Shown: positions 52,178 through 60,983 of the stretch, one piece after another
Position numbering within the stretch: position 1 is the first letter of the stretch
Layout: each line of letters starts with the position of its first letter
Sequence record: OR608733.1
Length of the DNA: 64,000 nucleotides
Direction: 5' to 3' (one strand)
The notes under the pieces: generated by a model
Database searches by the model: none
What the model saw: the letters and a program-made list of their open reading frames with translations, nothing else
Told to the model about the DNA's origin: nothing
Translations under genes and position numbers: made by a program

Positions 52178-52558
52178 TTAATATCCTTCATTGAGTAGTT
52201 CTGCTAGAGCACGTGCCTGTGAAATATCAGTAGAAGCAAAAACATCAGAAAGATAGTTATCATGCTCTTTTGCATTCTGACGCAATTCATCCATTAGATG
52301 TTTATTAGATATCGCCCAAACTTTCCACAGATTTTTATAATCATCATATTTGGGATTATATCCGTCTAGTGGTGGTTTTCCTTTACCAGCTTTCCAATGG
52401 TTGGAGTATATCCGATATCCTTTACAATCTAACTGCCAAGCTTCCTCAATTGTTCTGCCATCAGGAAGCCTTGCGTAAAGAGCCGAGAATCTTTTGTCAC
52501 CAACAGATGAACATTCATATCCTCCTCGGCGCTTCCACTGATATATTACTTTGGGTTC
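52178..52558 (-). CDS. Hidden 126-codon frame with no ATG/GTG/TTG near its 5' end; candidate -1 frameshift extension of the DNA polymerase subunit; possibly NADAR-like
   Basis: EPKVIYQWKRRGGYECSSVGDKRFSALYARLPDGRTIEEAWQLDCKGY...SQARALAELLNEGY*; bounded 5' by an in-frame TAA at 52561-52559. Confidence 0.7.
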   Translation of the reverse strand, partial: EPKVIYQWKRRGGYECSSVGDKRFSALYARLPDGRTIEEAWQLDCKGYRIYSNHWKAGKGKPPLDGYNPKYDDYKNLWKVWAISNKHLMDELRQNAKEHDNYLSDVFASTDISQARALAELLNEGY

Positions 52559-54462
52559 TTATAGGTATTAATAAACTTCTCTAGCAGGGTGTCCATTTTA
52601 GGAGCACCCATGATCTTCTGTGTGATTTCAATAGCATTAACCCTACCACCTGTTAAGTTTACGCCAACTTCACGGCGATGGTGTTCACTAATTCCTTCCA
52701 TCATTGAGAATTCCATCACACATGTTTCACGTGCAATATTTAGAATCTGACTAACGTTAGGATATGTCGACACGATGTCAAGGTCGGCGATATGACAGAA
52801 GATTAAGGTTTTATAATTCGGTAAATCTTTAACACACTGCAATCCATTTGGACCTGCCATGTATGATGGTAGTGTAACAATCCAATCATTATGGCCAATA
52901 ACATATTGATCAAGTTCATGCACCATCTGATCTGAACTTGAACCAATGACACATGGCTCTGGTCTATTCAAATACCAGAAGTGCATATCGTCACATAGTC
53001 GTTTTGGGTTAGAACTAAAGTTCTTATAGTCAGATGCCTTAGAGAATAGACTTATAGAGCGACCAAGGTCATTTACTTGTTCATCAAGTTGTTCTAGTCG
53101 AATGGAGTCGATGATGTTATAAAGACCATATTTGATTTTATGCTTAGTCTGCATCTCACGGTGCCAATCGATACCACCAAGATGTGCAGTTTCTTTAAAG
53201 GTTAACTTACCAAATTCCATTACATATCTAATAGAATCACCATAGGTAAAGTTATCATTTAATATAAAATCATCCACCGGTACCCATTCATTACTACCTA
53301 CATTTTTAATATATTTAGTAATAACACCACCAGGGCGGTCTACCAATTGTTTATTAAAACCTTCAATAAAATCTTCTAAGTCCTTATCATTTTTAATGGT
53401 CGTAGATTTATCGATGTTTAGTTCTTTTCTAAGAATAGACTCTAACCGATAGTTAGGATCACGTCCTTTAGCTAATCGAGTTACTCGATAAGTTGACATA
53501 GAATCGATGCATTGAAAACTAGCGGGTGCTGTAATCCAATGCCATTGATCCTCTGGTCCTTTAGATTTAGTGACCCCAGATGCAGTGGTGGTCATAGGCT
53601 CATCAATCTTAAAATGGAAATACCTATAATTCTTAGGTACCGATGGATCAGAAAAAATATCAGCTGGATTAACGCCATAGTGTTCTAATGTTTTTAAGAT
53701 TCTGCCAATGTCGAAGCTAATATTCCAGAATGCGAAGAAATCTGGTTTCCAGGTATGTAGTCGTTTAAAACATTCAATAATAATATCTACTGGTGTTTCA
53801 ACAACCATTACTTCAATATCTAGACCACGTTCTTTAATTAGATGTGATAGTACCTCTTCTTTTTGTGCTTGTTCTAATGTCTCTTTCACTGGATCTTCAA
53901 TATCACTAACCCATCGTTTTAAATAGGCTAGGAAAGCTTTGTTCTTATGTGTAACTGACATACAGATAATCTGGCCATCGTTCTCAGCTTCATAAACGTT
54001 GGTTTCGATGTCACCGCCAGCAACAGTGTTTAGAGAGATTAGACCAGGATAACGTTCTTGATAATCATGCTTCAGATAACAGGTTGAACTAACATCACTG
54101 CCATATAGGTAAGGACTACGCGCTAGTTGACGAAGAGATCTAGCCGAATAGTCACCTAGGATTTTACTAATCTTACGTTTCATGTCAATTTGAGTTGACA
54201 TGTATTTAACTAAGTTACGCTCATATTCGTAATCTTTCTTTTCTTTATGGTTACGCATTCCTTTTGCGGTAATCCAAAAAGGACGCTGGTAGTTTTCCCA
54301 CATCCTTAAATTATTTGCAGTTGTACCATCTTCAAAATGAATTCGTTCTTTAACGAAATGTGCATCTGTAAACTTACCAAATTGATCAGTACAATAAGTA
54401 ATATGTTTGGCTTCAATGCCCTTAATCTTTTTCTTATTTGTAACCTGTTGTTCATTAGACAT
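52546..54462 (-). CDS. gp82: Split family-B DNA polymerase subunit (3'-5' exonuclease plus motif A)
   Basis: 638 aa; Exo I GDIET, Exo II WNISFDI, Exo III YNIIDS; motif A DLDIVSTYP; motifs B and C absent. Confidence 0.85.
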   Translation of the reverse strand: MSNEQQVTNKKKIKGIEAKHITYCTDQFGKFTDAHFVKERIHFEDGTTANNLRMWENYQRPFWITAKGMRNHKEKKDYEYERNLVKYMSTQIDMKRKISKILGDYSARSLRQLARSPYLYGSDVSSTCYLKHDYQERYPGLISLNTVAGGDIETNVYEAENDGQIICMSVTHKNKAFLAYLKRWVSDIEDPVKETLEQAQKEEVLSHLIKERGLDIEVMVVETPVDIIIECFKRLHTWKPDFFAFWNISFDIGRILKTLEHYGVNPADIFSDPSVPKNYRYFHFKIDEPMTTTASGVTKSKGPEDQWHWITAPASFQCIDSMSTYRVTRLAKGRDPNYRLESILRKELNIDKSTTIKNDKDLEDFIEGFNKQLVDRPGGVITKYIKNVGSNEWVPVDDFILNDNFTYGDSIRYVMEFGKLTFKETAHLGGIDWHREMQTKHKIKYGLYNIIDSIRLEQLDEQVNDLGRSISLFSKASDYKNFSSNPKRLCDDMHFWYLNRPEPCVIGSSSDQMVHELDQYVIGHNDWIVTLPSYMAGPNGLQCVKDLPNYKTLIFCHIADLDIVSTYPNVSQILNIARETCVMEFSMMEGISEHHRREVGVNLTGGRVNAIEITQKIMGAPKMDTLLEKFINTYKNPK

Positions 54463-58920: not shown

Positions 58921-60522
58921 ATGGCTACTGCTGACTTCGATAATGAGTACGATGATACTCCAGAAGAGAATTTACTAGATCAAATTGATGAGATCAATGC
59001 GCAACACGATCCTGACTCTAGTATTGAAAATAATGACGAGGTGGAAACTCCACCTTTCGTTCCTGATCAAAAAGAAATTAAACTACGTATTCCACGTAAT
59101 GCTAAAACTGGAAATATCCGGGATGCTTCTGAACCGGTTATTAAAGATAGTGCTAGCATTCTTACTTTGCTACGTGAGAACCCCCAGACTGTTTATAATT
59201 TCCTGGATCACAATAAAGAACTATTTAAAGCATTTGCTGATAATAAAATAGATGACACTAGTGACGGTGTAAAGTGGACAGCTGCTATTCTGGAAGGCTT
59301 AGCTCACTCTATTGTTGAAGATGCACCAATCGGTGCAACTGCCCGAGAAGGTTCTGAATGGTCTAGTGAAATTCCTTATGGTGAAAAGATCATTCGACCA
59401 GGCCGACCTGTATTTAATACCAATGGTCGTAAAATGACCGATGATGAAACTCTAGTTTTCCTAACACGTAAAGCTAACATCGGTACGCCATATGATACTT
59501 TCCTACCTCATTCAGGTATTTGGGTAAAACTACGTGCACCCACTGGTACTGAAGTAGCTGCCCTACAAGCACGTCTAGCACAATTAAAGATCCGGCTAGG
59601 TGCTGAATCAAAAGGTATGCTGTTCTCAAACATGGCAGCTGTGTTACTTAACATGGTTAGTAGTTTAGCACTTGCATGTGTTATTCAATCCAACTATAAG
59701 TTCAACACTCCAACTGACCTAGAGCATGTTATCTCAGTAGCTGATGAACCATTCTTACATCATGCACTAGCAGCGACTATGTATCCAGATGGATTTAATT
59801 ATAGTTATCCATGTATTGCAGATGCCAATACATGTAACCATATTGAAACAGCGAAACTTAATATGTCAACGCTTGTTCAATATGATCTACTGGCATTCTC
59901 AGAAGAACAAAAGAAATATATTGCACGTAAGTTTAATGCATGTACTGAATCTGATCTTAAGACTTATAAAGAAGGATTCCGTATTGAAACTCAAGTAACT
60001 GAAATGTTTGGTGACGTTGGTGTTGTTCTTGAGATGTGCACAATTGCTGATCGCCGAGAGTCTGGTGATAGTTGGATTAACTCAATTATCGATATGACTC
60101 AAGGTAGTTTTAATGAACCAGTCGATGGTCCGCAACGTTCTCAGTATATTGCACGTTTACAAAAGATCTCTATTGCCCGTCAGTTCTCACATTTTGTTAA
60201 AGAAATTAAAGTACGTGAAGATGACGATGGTGAAAGTTCTGAAGACAATATTCGTACTGCAACCACTAATCGTGAAACTATTGAAAAGTTCTTAACTAAT
60301 ATTCTATCCACACCGGAATATAATGACCGCTTTATTAATGCGGTGAGTAACTTCATTGATTCACAACTAATTGGAATGATTGCAATTACAAGTTGGAATT
60401 GTCCAGTATGTGAGTCACCTGCCGCTACTAAATTTAAAGAACGTTTCCCACACCTAATCCCTATTGACATGCTGTCAACTTTTTTTACTTTGGCGGCCTC
60501 GAAGTCAAACCGGATGGTGTAG
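58921..60522 (+). CDS. Tail/baseplate assembly chaperone-like protein (gp77 position; T4 gp26/gp51-like)
   Basis: 533 aa; PYDTFLPHSGIWVKLRAP, YPC...CNH and WNCPVCES...STFF resemble myophage hub-assembly chaperones. Confidence 0.6.
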   Translation: MATADFDNEYDDTPEENLLDQIDEINAQHDPDSSIENNDEVETPPFVPDQKEIKLRIPRNAKTGNIRDASEPVIKDSASILTLLRENPQTVYNFLDHNKELFKAFADNKIDDTSDGVKWTAAILEGLAHSIVEDAPIGATAREGSEWSSEIPYGEKIIRPGRPVFNTNGRKMTDDETLVFLTRKANIGTPYDTFLPHSGIWVKLRAPTGTEVAALQARLAQLKIRLGAESKGMLFSNMAAVLLNMVSSLALACVIQSNYKFNTPTDLEHVISVADEPFLHHALAATMYPDGFNYSYPCIADANTCNHIETAKLNMSTLVQYDLLAFSEEQKKYIARKFNACTESDLKTYKEGFRIETQVTEMFGDVGVVLEMCTIADRRESGDSWINSIIDMTQGSFNEPVDGPQRSQYIARLQKISIARQFSHFVKEIKVREDDDGESSEDNIRTATTNRETIEKFLTNILSTPEYNDRFINAVSNFIDSQLIGMIAITSWNCPVCESPAATKFKERFPHLIPIDMLSTFFTLAASKSNRMV

Positions 60523-60983
60523 TTAATGATCTGAGATATAGTCGTCTTGAGGCCACTTTCAAGGAAGATAGTGGTCACATCCTACATCCAAACTTTGGTT
60601 ATGATAAGTTAACTGAAGATGATACACACTTAGATAGACTATTATCGACAGTAGGGGCAGTAAGACCGTCTACAGCAGCACGTTTAACAAGAGAAGCATA
60701 TCTACTTGATTACGATATCGGTTCACCAGAAAACGGACCCATGTGGTTAAATAAGGTAAATCCTAAAGAGGACTTTATCGAAGGTGGGTTGAGAAGGAGA
60801 CTGACTAGAGATTTCTTCAAGTATAAAGTAGGTAGCTTATCTAATATGTCATTAACTGAATTCTTTGAATTAGCTTATTCTGAGGTAGAATACATAATTG
60901 AATTATGTAGAAATATTACCCATAATGAAGCTGTTAATAACAATAACCAGTTAAATGAATTAAACAAGCCGTTAACTAAATAA
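60480..60983 (+). CDS. Candidate -1 frameshift extension of the gp77-like gene (GT-type)
   Basis: Frame open from 60468 to 60983 with no ATG/GTG/TTG until 60741; begins at a T7 run; the ORF track shows only the last 80 aa. Confidence 0.7.
   Translation, partial: FFYFGGLEVKPDGVVNDLRYSRLEATFKEDSGHILHPNFGYDKLTEDDTHLDRLLSTVGAVRPSTAARLTREAYLLDYDIGSPENGPMWLNKVNPKEDFIEGGLRRRLTRDFFKYKVGSLSNMSLTEFFELAYSEVEYIIELCRNITHNEAVNNNNQLNELNKPLTK

What the first reader, a model, noticed from the sequence alone, without database searches (positions are those of the whole stretch)
52460..52560. Candidate programmed -1 frameshift that fuses the DNA polymerase subunit to a hidden domain
On the minus strand gp82 ends AAC CCA AAG TAA. 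C_CCA_AAG (52555-52549) is a canonical X_XXY_YYZ heptamer ending in A_AAG, the most shift-prone tetramer in bacteria. Six nt downstream a multi-helix structure begins: ATCAG/CTGAT plus GAAGC/GCTTC (52542-52531 with 52469-52460), then GCCGAGGA/TTCTCGGC (52530-52523 with 52489-52482). The -1 frame opens only at 52558 (TAA at 52561-52559), right at the heptamer, has no ATG/GTG/TTG near its 5' end, and runs 123 further codons to 52178 with protein-like sequence. The predicted products are 638 aa and a 761-aa fusion. Heptamer, spacer, stem and start-less frame all coincide at one stop codon, which is unlikely by chance. I am not aware of this being described.
Basis: partly seen in the sequence, partly recalled or inferred. 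Interest (0 to 1): 0.9.

Follow-up and report, generated by a model that had tools for sequence, protein, structure and literature searches.

The report
Frameshift-extended DNA polymerase subunit in phiKZ
In the giant Pseudomonas phage phiKZ, ribosomes very probably slip back one base at the last codons of a DNA polymerase subunit gene, so that a fraction of the protein carries an extra conserved 123-residue domain; I found no published description of this.

Summary
The window is a phiKZ-type jumbo phage. On the minus strand the gp82 gene (DNAP-N, the exonuclease and part-palm half of the split B-family polymerase) ends AAC CCA AAG TAA. A 123-codon ORF in the -1 frame follows, with no ATG, GTG or TTG before codon 85.

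That ORF is a real, widespread protein family (phrog_9995) under purifying selection (dN/dS 0.03-0.30).

Fourteen diverged relatives keep C_CCA_AAG in the polymerase frame, 0-3 nt before its stop. The flanking sequence varies and synonymous sites are saturated. The codon before CCA is one of eight different codons, all ending in C.

The codon where stand-alone homologues start is ATG or GTG in some relatives but ATA, ACA, GAA or GTA in others. Noxifer has A_AAA_AAG instead. Two phiKZ-like metagenomic contigs encode the same polymerase-plus-domain fusion in one frame.

All 47 phiKZ-type records match without an indel, which rules out a sequencing error.

The domain's function is unknown.

Verdict: a well-supported and apparently undescribed -1 programmed frameshift, still without experimental proof. 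A second similar candidate lies at gp77.

The parts
52546..54462 (-). Zero-frame gene: phiKZ gp82 = DNAP-N, 638 aa. [quoted passage not shown]
   Evidence: ORF list. PHROG phrog_3011 'DNA polymerase', E = 4.5e-242. Annotated DNA polymerase / PHIKZ082 in relatives. Role as DNAP-N taken from bioRxiv 10.64898/2026.09.30.755723.
52549..52555 (-). Slippery heptamer C_CCA_AAG in the polymerase reading frame; the proposed site of tandem -1 tRNA slippage (CCA->CCC, AAG->AAA).
   Evidence: Sequence. Invariant in 14 diverged lineages while the flanks vary. Described as highly shift-prone in E. coli in PMC5009743.
52546..52548 (-). Zero-frame stop codon TAA, directly 3' of the heptamer. It ends the 638-aa product.
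   Evidence: In relatives a stop follows 0 or 3 nt after the heptamer.
52178..52549 (-). The -1-frame extension: 123 sense codons (VIYQWKRRGGYECSS...LNEGY) plus the stop at 52180-52178. It encodes a phrog_9995-family domain.
   Evidence: Translation. phrog_9995, E = 1.7e-55, covering profile positions 2-123 of 124. 98 phage records by tblastn. 556 clusters by HMMER. dN/dS 0.03-0.30. AlphaFold2 pLDDT 96.8.
52544..52546 (-). ATA codon at the position where stand-alone family members have their Met. It overlaps the stop (TAATA). It is the candidate site for the rival explanation, weak non-canonical reinitiation.
   Evidence: The same position is ATG, GTG, ATA, ACA, GAA or GTA in relatives.
52473..52538 (-). 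First hairpin of the 113-nt minimum-energy fold. Possible but unproven 3' stimulator.
   Evidence: z = -3.2; z = -2.3; 8% of controls reach this; no covariation; the helix is not kept in relatives.
52438..52471 (-). Second hairpin of the minimum-energy fold (GGCUUCCUG...UGAGGAAGCU).
52178..52294 (-). The only part annotated in GenBank phiKZ (PHIKZ082.1, 38 aa from the internal ATG). This is a truncated call covering the last third of the domain.
   Evidence: phrog_33573 matches residues 85-122 only.

Best explanation
gp82 of this phiKZ-type phage is decoded in two ways.

Most host ribosomes read AAC CCA AAG and terminate at TAA. This gives the 638-aa DNAP-N subunit.

A fraction of ribosomes slip back one nucleotide. 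With tRNA-Pro on CCA and tRNA-Lys on AAG, the two tRNAs re-pair with CCC and AAA. The ribosome then reads GTA ATA TAT CAG TGG ... for 123 further codons. The result is a 761-aa DNAP-N with a C-terminal phrog_9995 domain.

The extension leaves the subunit at the split inside the palm-insertion domain. A sub-stoichiometric share of polymerase complexes would therefore carry this accessory domain as a tethered module.

Shown here:
- the sequence anatomy;
- the coding status and folding of the extension;
- nucleotide-level conservation of the shift site;
- the absence of start codons in many lineages;
- natural in-frame fusions.

Inferred:
- that slippage actually happens, and how efficiently;
- what stimulates it (the adjacent stop codon and/or a lineage-specific downstream hairpin);
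- what the domain does.

My working guess on function is an enzymatic or nucleotide-binding accessory that acts on DNA at the replisome. Fusion to an imported subunit could also carry it into the phage nucleus. This guess has low confidence.
For: 1. Anatomy is exactly as described.

2. The extension is a genuine protein.
- phrog_9995, E = 1.7e-55.
- 98 phage records and 556 clusters at 50% identity.
- AlphaFold2 mean pLDDT 96.8. The strand at residues 3-5 is part of the fold, so translation from the internal ATG (codon 85) cannot give the domain.

3. Purifying selection holds even between lineages that both lack a start codon (IMGVR_a/ERR110 0.17, IMGVR_a/SRR156 0.10, window/PhiPA3 0.028).

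4. CCCAAAG is the only fully conserved block at the junction in 14 lineages. Between the main groups, 0.71-0.84 of synonymous sites differ. The codon before CCA is AAC, CCC, TCC, CTC, GCC, GAC, ACC or GTC: eight amino acids, always with C in the third position.

5. In all 14 lineages the domain ORF is in the -1 frame and open from the heptamer.

6. The codon at the family's start position varies.
- ATG: 2 lineages.
- GTG: 4 lineages.
- ATA: phiKZ, ERZ27268034 and PS119XW (PS119XW has a GTG one codon upstream).
- ACA: 3 lineages. GAA: 1. GTA: 1.

7. Noxifer lacks CCCAAAG. It has the classical A_AAA_AAG in the polymerase frame 36 nt before the stop, an open -1 frame and no start codon.

8. Natural in-frame fusions exist.
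- P0110, 698 aa: a DNAP-N homologue plus the domain, next to a PhiKZ_MCP gene.
- P0100: the polymerase C-terminus plus the domain, read ...S E P K D K P L Y T W... through CCC AAA G.

9. 47 independently deposited phiKZ-type genomes match with no net indel.

10. C_CCA_AAG is reported as highly shift-prone in E. coli (PMC5009743).
Against: - There is no direct evidence of the trans-frame protein. No mass-spectrometry or Ribo-seq data could be found.
- Recombinant 638-aa gp82 plus gp50 already forms an active polymerase, so the long form is not required for basic activity.
- The 3' structure is not conserved. In phiKZ it is only marginally more stable than controls.
- phiKZ has no SD-like element upstream of the site.
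- Six lineages have an ATG or GTG at the domain's normal start. RVTF4 and Psa21 express the domain from their own GTG or TTG in the +1 frame with no heptamer. Fusion is therefore not obligatory for function.
- The tRNA-Lys repertoire of Pseudomonas aeruginosa, which affects how slippery A_AAG is, was not examined.
Confidence: 0.8

Rival explanations
1. Termination-reinitiation at a non-canonical codon. Ribosomes finishing gp82 at TAA restart on the overlapping ATA (TAATA, 52548-52544) and make a free 122-aa protein. No fusion is made.
For: - PhiPA3 and one metagenomic relative have TAATG at exactly this place, the classical coupling arrangement.
- The family is mostly a stand-alone protein of about 125 aa that starts at this codon.
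- RVTF4 and Psa21 use their own GTG or TTG.
Against: - ACA, GAA and GTA occupy the same position in five lineages whose ORF is still under purifying selection.
- No SD precedes the ATA.
- This reading does not explain why the heptamer, including three synonymous positions, is invariant in 14 lineages.
- It does not explain why the ORF is always in the -1 frame and open from the heptamer.
- It does not explain Noxifer's A_AAA_AAG or the in-frame fusions.
- It may coexist with frameshifting at a low level in phiKZ.
Confidence: 0.1
2. The downstream ORF is a dying gene in phiKZ. It lost its ATG (ATG->ATA) and is no longer expressed, and the heptamer is a coincidence.
For: - A single G->A change separates PhiPA3's ATG from phiKZ's ATA.
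- Annotators call only fragments of the ORF.
Against: - The ORF is intact in all 47 phiKZ-type genomes.
- dN/dS between window and PhiPA3 is 0.028.
- Several other start-less lineages also keep the ORF intact.
Confidence: 0.03
3. The frame change is made at the RNA or DNA level (transcriptional slippage), or it is an assembly or sequencing error.
For: None specific. Homopolymer errors are common in phage assemblies.
Against: - CCCAAAG contains no run longer than three bases.
- 47 records from many laboratories match the 91-nt and 801-nt junction queries with no net indel.
- Diverged relatives keep the same two-frame layout.
Confidence: 0.02

Closest known systems
Phage tail assembly chaperone G/GT-type -1 frameshift (lambda G-T and its many analogues)
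   Same: An X_XXA_AAG-type heptamer near the end of a phage gene. The short product is the major one, and a minor product is extended at the C-terminus by an additional domain in the -1 frame. The downstream ORF has no start codon of its own. The shift is conserved by position rather than by sequence across diverged phages. (This comparison rests on my own knowledge of the system and on PMC5009743.)
   Different: A different gene class: a replicative DNA polymerase subunit, not a virion assembly chaperone. The added domain also exists widely as a free protein. Some relatives have it as a separate gene or as a true in-frame fusion.
E. coli dnaX tau/gamma
   Same: A -1 frameshift on a heptamer ending in A_AAG yields two forms of a replicase subunit that differ at the C-terminus (PMC5009743).
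   Different: In dnaX the shift truncates the protein (gamma), occurs mid-gene at about 1:1, and uses a strong upstream SD-like element plus a 3' hairpin. Here the shift extends the protein and occurs at the last two codons. phiKZ has no upstream SD-like element and no conserved hairpin.
E. coli copA C_CCA_AAG frameshift (CopA(Z))
   Same: The same heptamer, C_CCA_AAG. (This is my recollection of the primary paper. One search confirms only that the heptamer is highly shift-prone in E. coli.)
   Different: In copA the shift leads to immediate termination and a short chaperone. Here it opens a 123-codon domain.
Translational coupling by overlapping stop/start (TAATG)
   Same: PhiPA3 and one metagenomic relative have exactly TAATG at this junction.
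   Different: The window has TAATA. Other lineages have TAACA, TAGAA or TAGTA, which cannot serve as starts.

Membership tests
-1 programmed ribosomal frameshifting, tandem-slippage (X_XXY_YYZ) class | Slippery heptamer in the correct register of the zero frame | tested here: met
   C_CCA_AAG at 52555-52549, in register with the gp82 frame.
-1 programmed ribosomal frameshifting, tandem-slippage (X_XXY_YYZ) class | The -1 frame is open from the shift site and encodes a selected protein | tested here: met
   123 codons; phrog_9995; dN/dS 0.03-0.30; confident fold.
-1 programmed ribosomal frameshifting, tandem-slippage (X_XXY_YYZ) class | The downstream ORF has no independent initiation signal | tested here: met
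   In the window there is no ATG/GTG/TTG before codon 85 and no SD. Seven other lineages also have no start at the domain's N-terminus (Noxifer, Phabio, HPP-Temi, IMGVR_3300034158, ERZ27268034, SRR15674956, ERR11042041). Seven lineages do have an ATG or GTG at or next to that position (PhiPA3, IMGVR_3300041405, 201phi2-1, Viktualia, SRR6464573, ERZ1755726, and PS119XW one codon upstream).
-1 programmed ribosomal frameshifting, tandem-slippage (X_XXY_YYZ) class | The shift site is conserved beyond what the encoded amino acids require | tested here: met
   The heptamer is invariant in 14 lineages. Eight different preceding codons all end in C. 0.71-0.84 of synonymous sites differ between the main groups.
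-1 programmed ribosomal frameshifting, tandem-slippage (X_XXY_YYZ) class | A 3' stimulatory RNA structure 5-9 nt downstream, or a 5' SD-like stimulator | tested here: inconclusive
   Structures exist in each lineage: z from -0.05 to -4.5 against dinucleotide shuffles and -0.6 to -4.1 against synonymous resampling. They differ between lineages and show no covariation. The phiKZ value is reached by 8% of control segments. An SD-like element is present in the 201phi2-1 and PS119XW groups and absent in phiKZ.
-1 programmed ribosomal frameshifting, tandem-slippage (X_XXY_YYZ) class | A trans-frame protein is detected or reporter frameshifting is measured | not testable with these tools
   No proteomic or Ribo-seq evidence was found in the searchable literature.
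phrog_9995 protein family (function unknown) | Full-length match to the family profile | tested here: met
   E = 1.7e-55; residues 2-122 match profile positions 2-123 of 124.
NADAR (YbiA-like, PF08719) superfamily, for the appended domain | Sequence or profile similarity to NADAR | tested here: not met
   No Pfam hit for any of 67 family members. hhalign against YbiA and against a 31-sequence NADAR profile gives probability below 1%.
NADAR (YbiA-like, PF08719) superfamily, for the appended domain | Shared fold | tested here: inconclusive
   Foldseek finds only weak matches: YbiA 2b3w TM 0.53, NADAR 8bau TM 0.43, all with E > 0.1. Many NADAR and DUF4326 models appear among the weak viral hits.
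Stop/start translational coupling | A canonical start codon overlapping or adjacent to the upstream stop | tested here: not met
   TAATA in the window. TAATG occurs only in PhiPA3 and one metagenomic contig.

The most novel reading that the evidence does not exclude
phiKZ-like nucleus-forming phages use -1 ribosomal frameshifting repeatedly (gp82 and probably gp77) to attach accessory modules to imported core proteins.

Under this reading the replicative polymerase exists as two isoforms. The minor isoform carries a tethered enzyme of an uncharacterised, widespread family. That family is distantly NADAR/DUF4326-like in fold, and elsewhere it is fused to SLOG, DUF488 and DUF4326 domains. It would remove or sense a DNA or nucleotide modification at the fork.

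Fusion would serve both to fix the stoichiometry and to carry the domain through the phage-nucleus shell.
Probability: 0.15. Interest if true: 0.85.

Novelty: new member of a known kind. Interest (0 to 1): 0.66.

Why it matters
phiKZ is the model nucleus-forming jumbo phage. Its split DNA polymerase was reconstituted and solved by cryo-EM only in 2026, using the 638-aa gp82.

If the frameshift is real, the native enzyme population includes a 761-aa isoform with an extra domain. That domain is missing from all current annotations, structures, interaction screens and knock-down interpretations.

The finding also assigns a first physical partner, a replicative polymerase, to a very widespread protein family of unknown function (556 clusters at 50% identity).

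It adds a replication-gene example to phage recoding, which is best known from tail genes.

It also shows that gene callers systematically truncate or miss this gene in dozens of deposited jumbo-phage genomes.

Tried and rejected
- **Sequencing error.** Rejected. 47 records show no indel.
Not supported. There are no compensatory changes, and the inner helix is replaced by a different hairpin in PhiPA3-type relatives.
- **An upstream SD-like stimulator.** Absent in phiKZ.
- **The zero-frame ATG at 52517 behind GAGGAGG** (a 29-codon ORF annotated in some records). Rejected as a by-product of the R-R-G-G-Y-E codons. It is not conserved in PhiPA3.
- **Known RNA elements.** There is no Rfam family at the site and no tRNA gene in the window.
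- **Function of the domain.**
  - No Pfam hit.
  - No significant PDB sequence hit; the best is E = 0.012, to ribosomal protein uL3.
  - Foldseek gives only weak NADAR/DUF4326 matches.
  - hhalign against YbiA and a NADAR profile is negative.
- **Literature.** Nine searches and five papers were read for any mention of frameshifting in gp82, PHIKZ082.1 or chimalliviruses. None was found. One supplement search for PHIKZ082.1 was empty.
- **A frameshift in RVTF4 and Psa21.** Considered. No plausible +1 site was seen, and I treat these as separately initiated genes. Their strong local RNA structure (z = -4.6 and -3.2) remains unexplained.
Full report
**What the window is.** The 801 nt around the finding are 99-100% identical to 40 Pseudomonas phage genomes of the species Phikzvirus phiKZ and 95-99% identical to seven more. 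The 638-aa minus-strand ORF 54462..52546 is phiKZ gp82 and matches phrog_3011 'DNA polymerase' with E = 4.5e-242. [quoted passage not shown] The split lies inside a palm insertion. Neither preprint mentions frameshifting.

**Check of the observation.** All coordinates are right.
- gp82 ends AAC CCA AAG TAA.
- CCCAAAG lies at 52555-52549 in the register C_CCA_AAG.
- The -1 frame is closed by TAA at 52561-52559 and then runs to the stop at 52180-52178.
- That frame has no ATG, GTG or TTG until the ATG at 52294 (codon 85).
- The stated helix arms are complementary as written.
- GenBank phiKZ annotates only the last 38 codons (PHIKZ082.1). Other records call two small fragments or nothing.

**The hidden ORF is a real protein.**
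- Counted from the ATA at 52546, it matches phrog_9995 over the whole profile (E = 1.7e-55; residues 2-122 on profile positions 2-123 of 124).
- tblastn finds it in 98 phage records. These include stand-alone genes in N4-like Achromobacter and Delftia phages and in Sphingomonas phage PAU.
- HMMER against 1.84 billion representatives finds 556 clusters. The word-indexed search finds hundreds of free proteins of about 125 aa.
- With a 67-sequence alignment, AlphaFold2 gives mean pLDDT 96.8. A strand at residues 3-5 belongs to the fold. The N-terminal residues must therefore be translated.

**Comparative test at the junction.** I read the junction in 14 lineages that have a polymerase gene upstream. 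These were phiKZ, PhiPA3, 201phi2-1, Viktualia, PS119XW, HPP-Temi, Phabio and seven metagenomic contigs.
- All 14 keep CCCAAAG in the register C_CCA_AAG of the polymerase frame.
- A stop follows 0 or 3 nt later.
- The domain ORF is always in the -1 frame and open from the heptamer.
- In an ungapped alignment anchored on the heptamer, those seven bases are the only fully conserved block.
- The polymerase tails differ: KNPK, QPPK, ESPKL, ELPK, NSPK, PAPK, QDPK, ETPK, QVPK.
- The codon before CCA is AAC, CCC, TCC, CTC, GCC, GAC, ACC or GTC. That is eight amino acids, always with C in the third position, which is the first X of the heptamer.
- Between the main groups, 0.71-0.84 of synonymous sites differ. 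Lack of divergence therefore cannot explain why three synonymous positions never change.

**Start codons.** The codon at the position where stand-alone homologues have their Met is:
- ATG in PhiPA3 and one contig;
- GTG in the 201phi2-1 group and in ERZ1755726;
- ATA in phiKZ, ERZ27268034 and PS119XW (PS119XW has a GTG one codon earlier);
- ACA in three lineages, GAA in one, and GTA in Phabio.

The ORF is nevertheless under purifying selection in pairs where neither member has a start codon (dN/dS 0.10-0.30). Between the window and PhiPA3 the value is 0.028.

Noxifer lacks CCCAAAG. It has A_AAA_AAG in the polymerase frame 36 nt before the stop, an open -1 frame and no start codon.

RVTF4 and Psa21 are the exceptions. 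Their ORF is in the +1 frame, overlaps the polymerase 3' end, starts with GTG or TTG at the conserved position, and has no heptamer.

**Natural fusions.** Among the 150 best HMMER hits, two also match gp82.
- P0110 (698 aa) is a DNAP-N homologue with the domain at residues 561-676. It lies on a contig next to a PhiKZ_MCP gene.
- P0100 joins a polymerase C-terminus that is 53% identical to gp82 residues 550-630 to the domain. It lies next to a PhiKZ_gp85-like gene.
- At its junction the DNA reads TCA GAA CCC AAA GAC AAA CCT TTA TAT ACA TGG, translated S E P K D K P L Y T W. CCCAAAG is read there in the register that phiKZ ribosomes would adopt after slipping.

**Error and chance.**
- All 47 phiKZ-type records match the 801-nt and 91-nt queries without net indels, and 40 are identical across the 91-nt junction.
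- In the window, -1-frame continuation after a stop is common: nine of 46 long frames show it, because neighbouring genes often overlap in that frame.
- Only two of those have a heptamer in the overlap.

**RNA structure.**
- In 113 nt the minimum-energy fold keeps GCCGAGGA/UUCUCGGC. Here z = -3.2.
- Against synonymous-codon resampling, the window gives z = -2.3, 201phi2-1 gives -3.0, Phabio gives -4.1, and five other lineages give -0.6 to -1.5.
- 8% of 51 control coding segments from the window reach -2.3.
- In-frame fusions and stand-alone genes show no structure (z from -0.6 to +1.1). RVTF4, Psa21 and Noxifer show strong structure.
- RNAalifold finds no compensatory pair. The consensus hairpin of the PhiPA3 type is broken in phiKZ.
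- An upstream SD-like element is strong in the 201phi2-1 and PS119XW groups and absent in phiKZ.

I conclude that a local structure may help, but it is lineage-specific and unproven. The stop codon directly after the heptamer is an alternative stimulator (the 'shifty stop' idea, which is cited in PMC5009743).

**Mechanism.** C_CCA_AAG is listed as highly shift-prone in E. coli (PMC5009743). The conserved first C argues for tandem slippage of tRNA-Pro and tRNA-Lys rather than slippage of tRNA-Lys alone. I did not check the tRNA-Lys repertoire of the host. The efficiency of the shift is unknown. The short form is enough for polymerase activity in vitro.

**Function of the domain.**
- No Pfam family matches it.
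- Elsewhere the domain is fused to DUF4326 (three proteins), a YAcAr SLOG domain and DUF488-N3a. It also sits inside very long proteins that have no Pfam hits.
- Foldseek gives only weak matches, but these are enriched for NADAR and DUF4326.
- Profile comparison with YbiA and with a NADAR profile is negative.

Its function is therefore unknown. An enzymatic or nucleotide-related accessory role at the replisome is a guess.

**Novelty.** Full-text searches found no description of recoding in gp82, PHIKZ082.1 or chimalliviruses. The mechanism is classical. The instance appears to be new: a phage replicative polymerase subunit extended by a domain that is free, fused or frameshift-linked in different relatives.

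**Seen in passing.** A second start-less -1 ORF follows gp77, with a T_TTT_TTT run. The arrangement is conserved in PhiPA3, Phabio and PS119XW, while Psa21 and D6 have an ATG. Group I introns interrupt the gp82 homologues of PhiPA3 and HPP-Temi.

Noticed in passing
window 58921-60983, + strand (phiKZ gp77 and PHIKZ076.4): A second candidate -1 frameshift.

- The 533-aa ORF 58921..60522 contains T_TTT_TTT (60480-60486) in its own frame, 33 nt before its stop.
- The -1 frame is open from 60468 to 60983. Its first ATG is only at 60741 (the annotated 80-aa PHIKZ076.4).
- The start-less 75 residues upstream of that ATG are conserved at about 40% identity in PS119XW, PA1C, Psa21, D6, PhiPA3 and Phabio.
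- PhiPA3, Phabio and PS119XW show the same layout: a T6 or T5C run, the -1 frame, and no start before the conserved part. Psa21 and D6 have an ATG there.
- The peptide after the shift (FY.GGPES.P.G) looks better conserved than the zero-frame tail.
   Followed up: partly
L004 184-489 (PhiPA3) and L017 854-1189 (HPP-Temi): Group I introns (Rfam RF00028; 71.7 and 59.2 bits) interrupt the gp82-homologous DNA polymerase gene just after the ADLD motif. In HPP-Temi an annotated HNH endonuclease ORF (locus 1-905) runs into the 5' part of the intron match. The annotated PhiPA3 polymerase CDS therefore stops early and misses its last exon.
   Followed up: partly
L019 2920-3090 (GCA_009771185.1, contig WPCG01120037.1): In this phiKZ-like contig the DNAP-N gene is itself split into a 482-aa ORF and a 236-aa ORF (TGA, 2 nt, then ATG; -1 frame relation). 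The split lies about 20 residues before the ADLD motif. The second ORF carries the in-frame fusion to the phrog_9995 domain.
   Followed up: no
L014 (RVTF4) and L015 (Psa21), about 1470-1585: In the two relatives where the domain gene has its own GTG or TTG and overlaps the polymerase 3' end in the +1 frame, the first 114 nt of the domain gene are unusually structured (z = -4.6 and -3.2 against synonymous resampling). This may reflect translational coupling. It remains unexplained.
   Followed up: no
proteins P0007, P0012, P0017 and about 40 others: The phrog_9995 domain also occurs inside very long predicted proteins (1,500-6,100 aa). The three that I scanned have no Pfam hit at all. Their origin was not examined: giant viral or cellular multidomain proteins, or merged gene calls.
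   Followed up: no
window 52428-52517, minus strand: A 29-codon ORF in the gp82 frame starts at an ATG just behind GAGGAGG. It is annotated as 'hypothetical protein' in several phiKZ-type records. It is a by-product of the R-R-G-G-Y-E codons of the -1-frame domain and is not conserved in PhiPA3. It is most likely a spurious gene call.
   Followed up: yes
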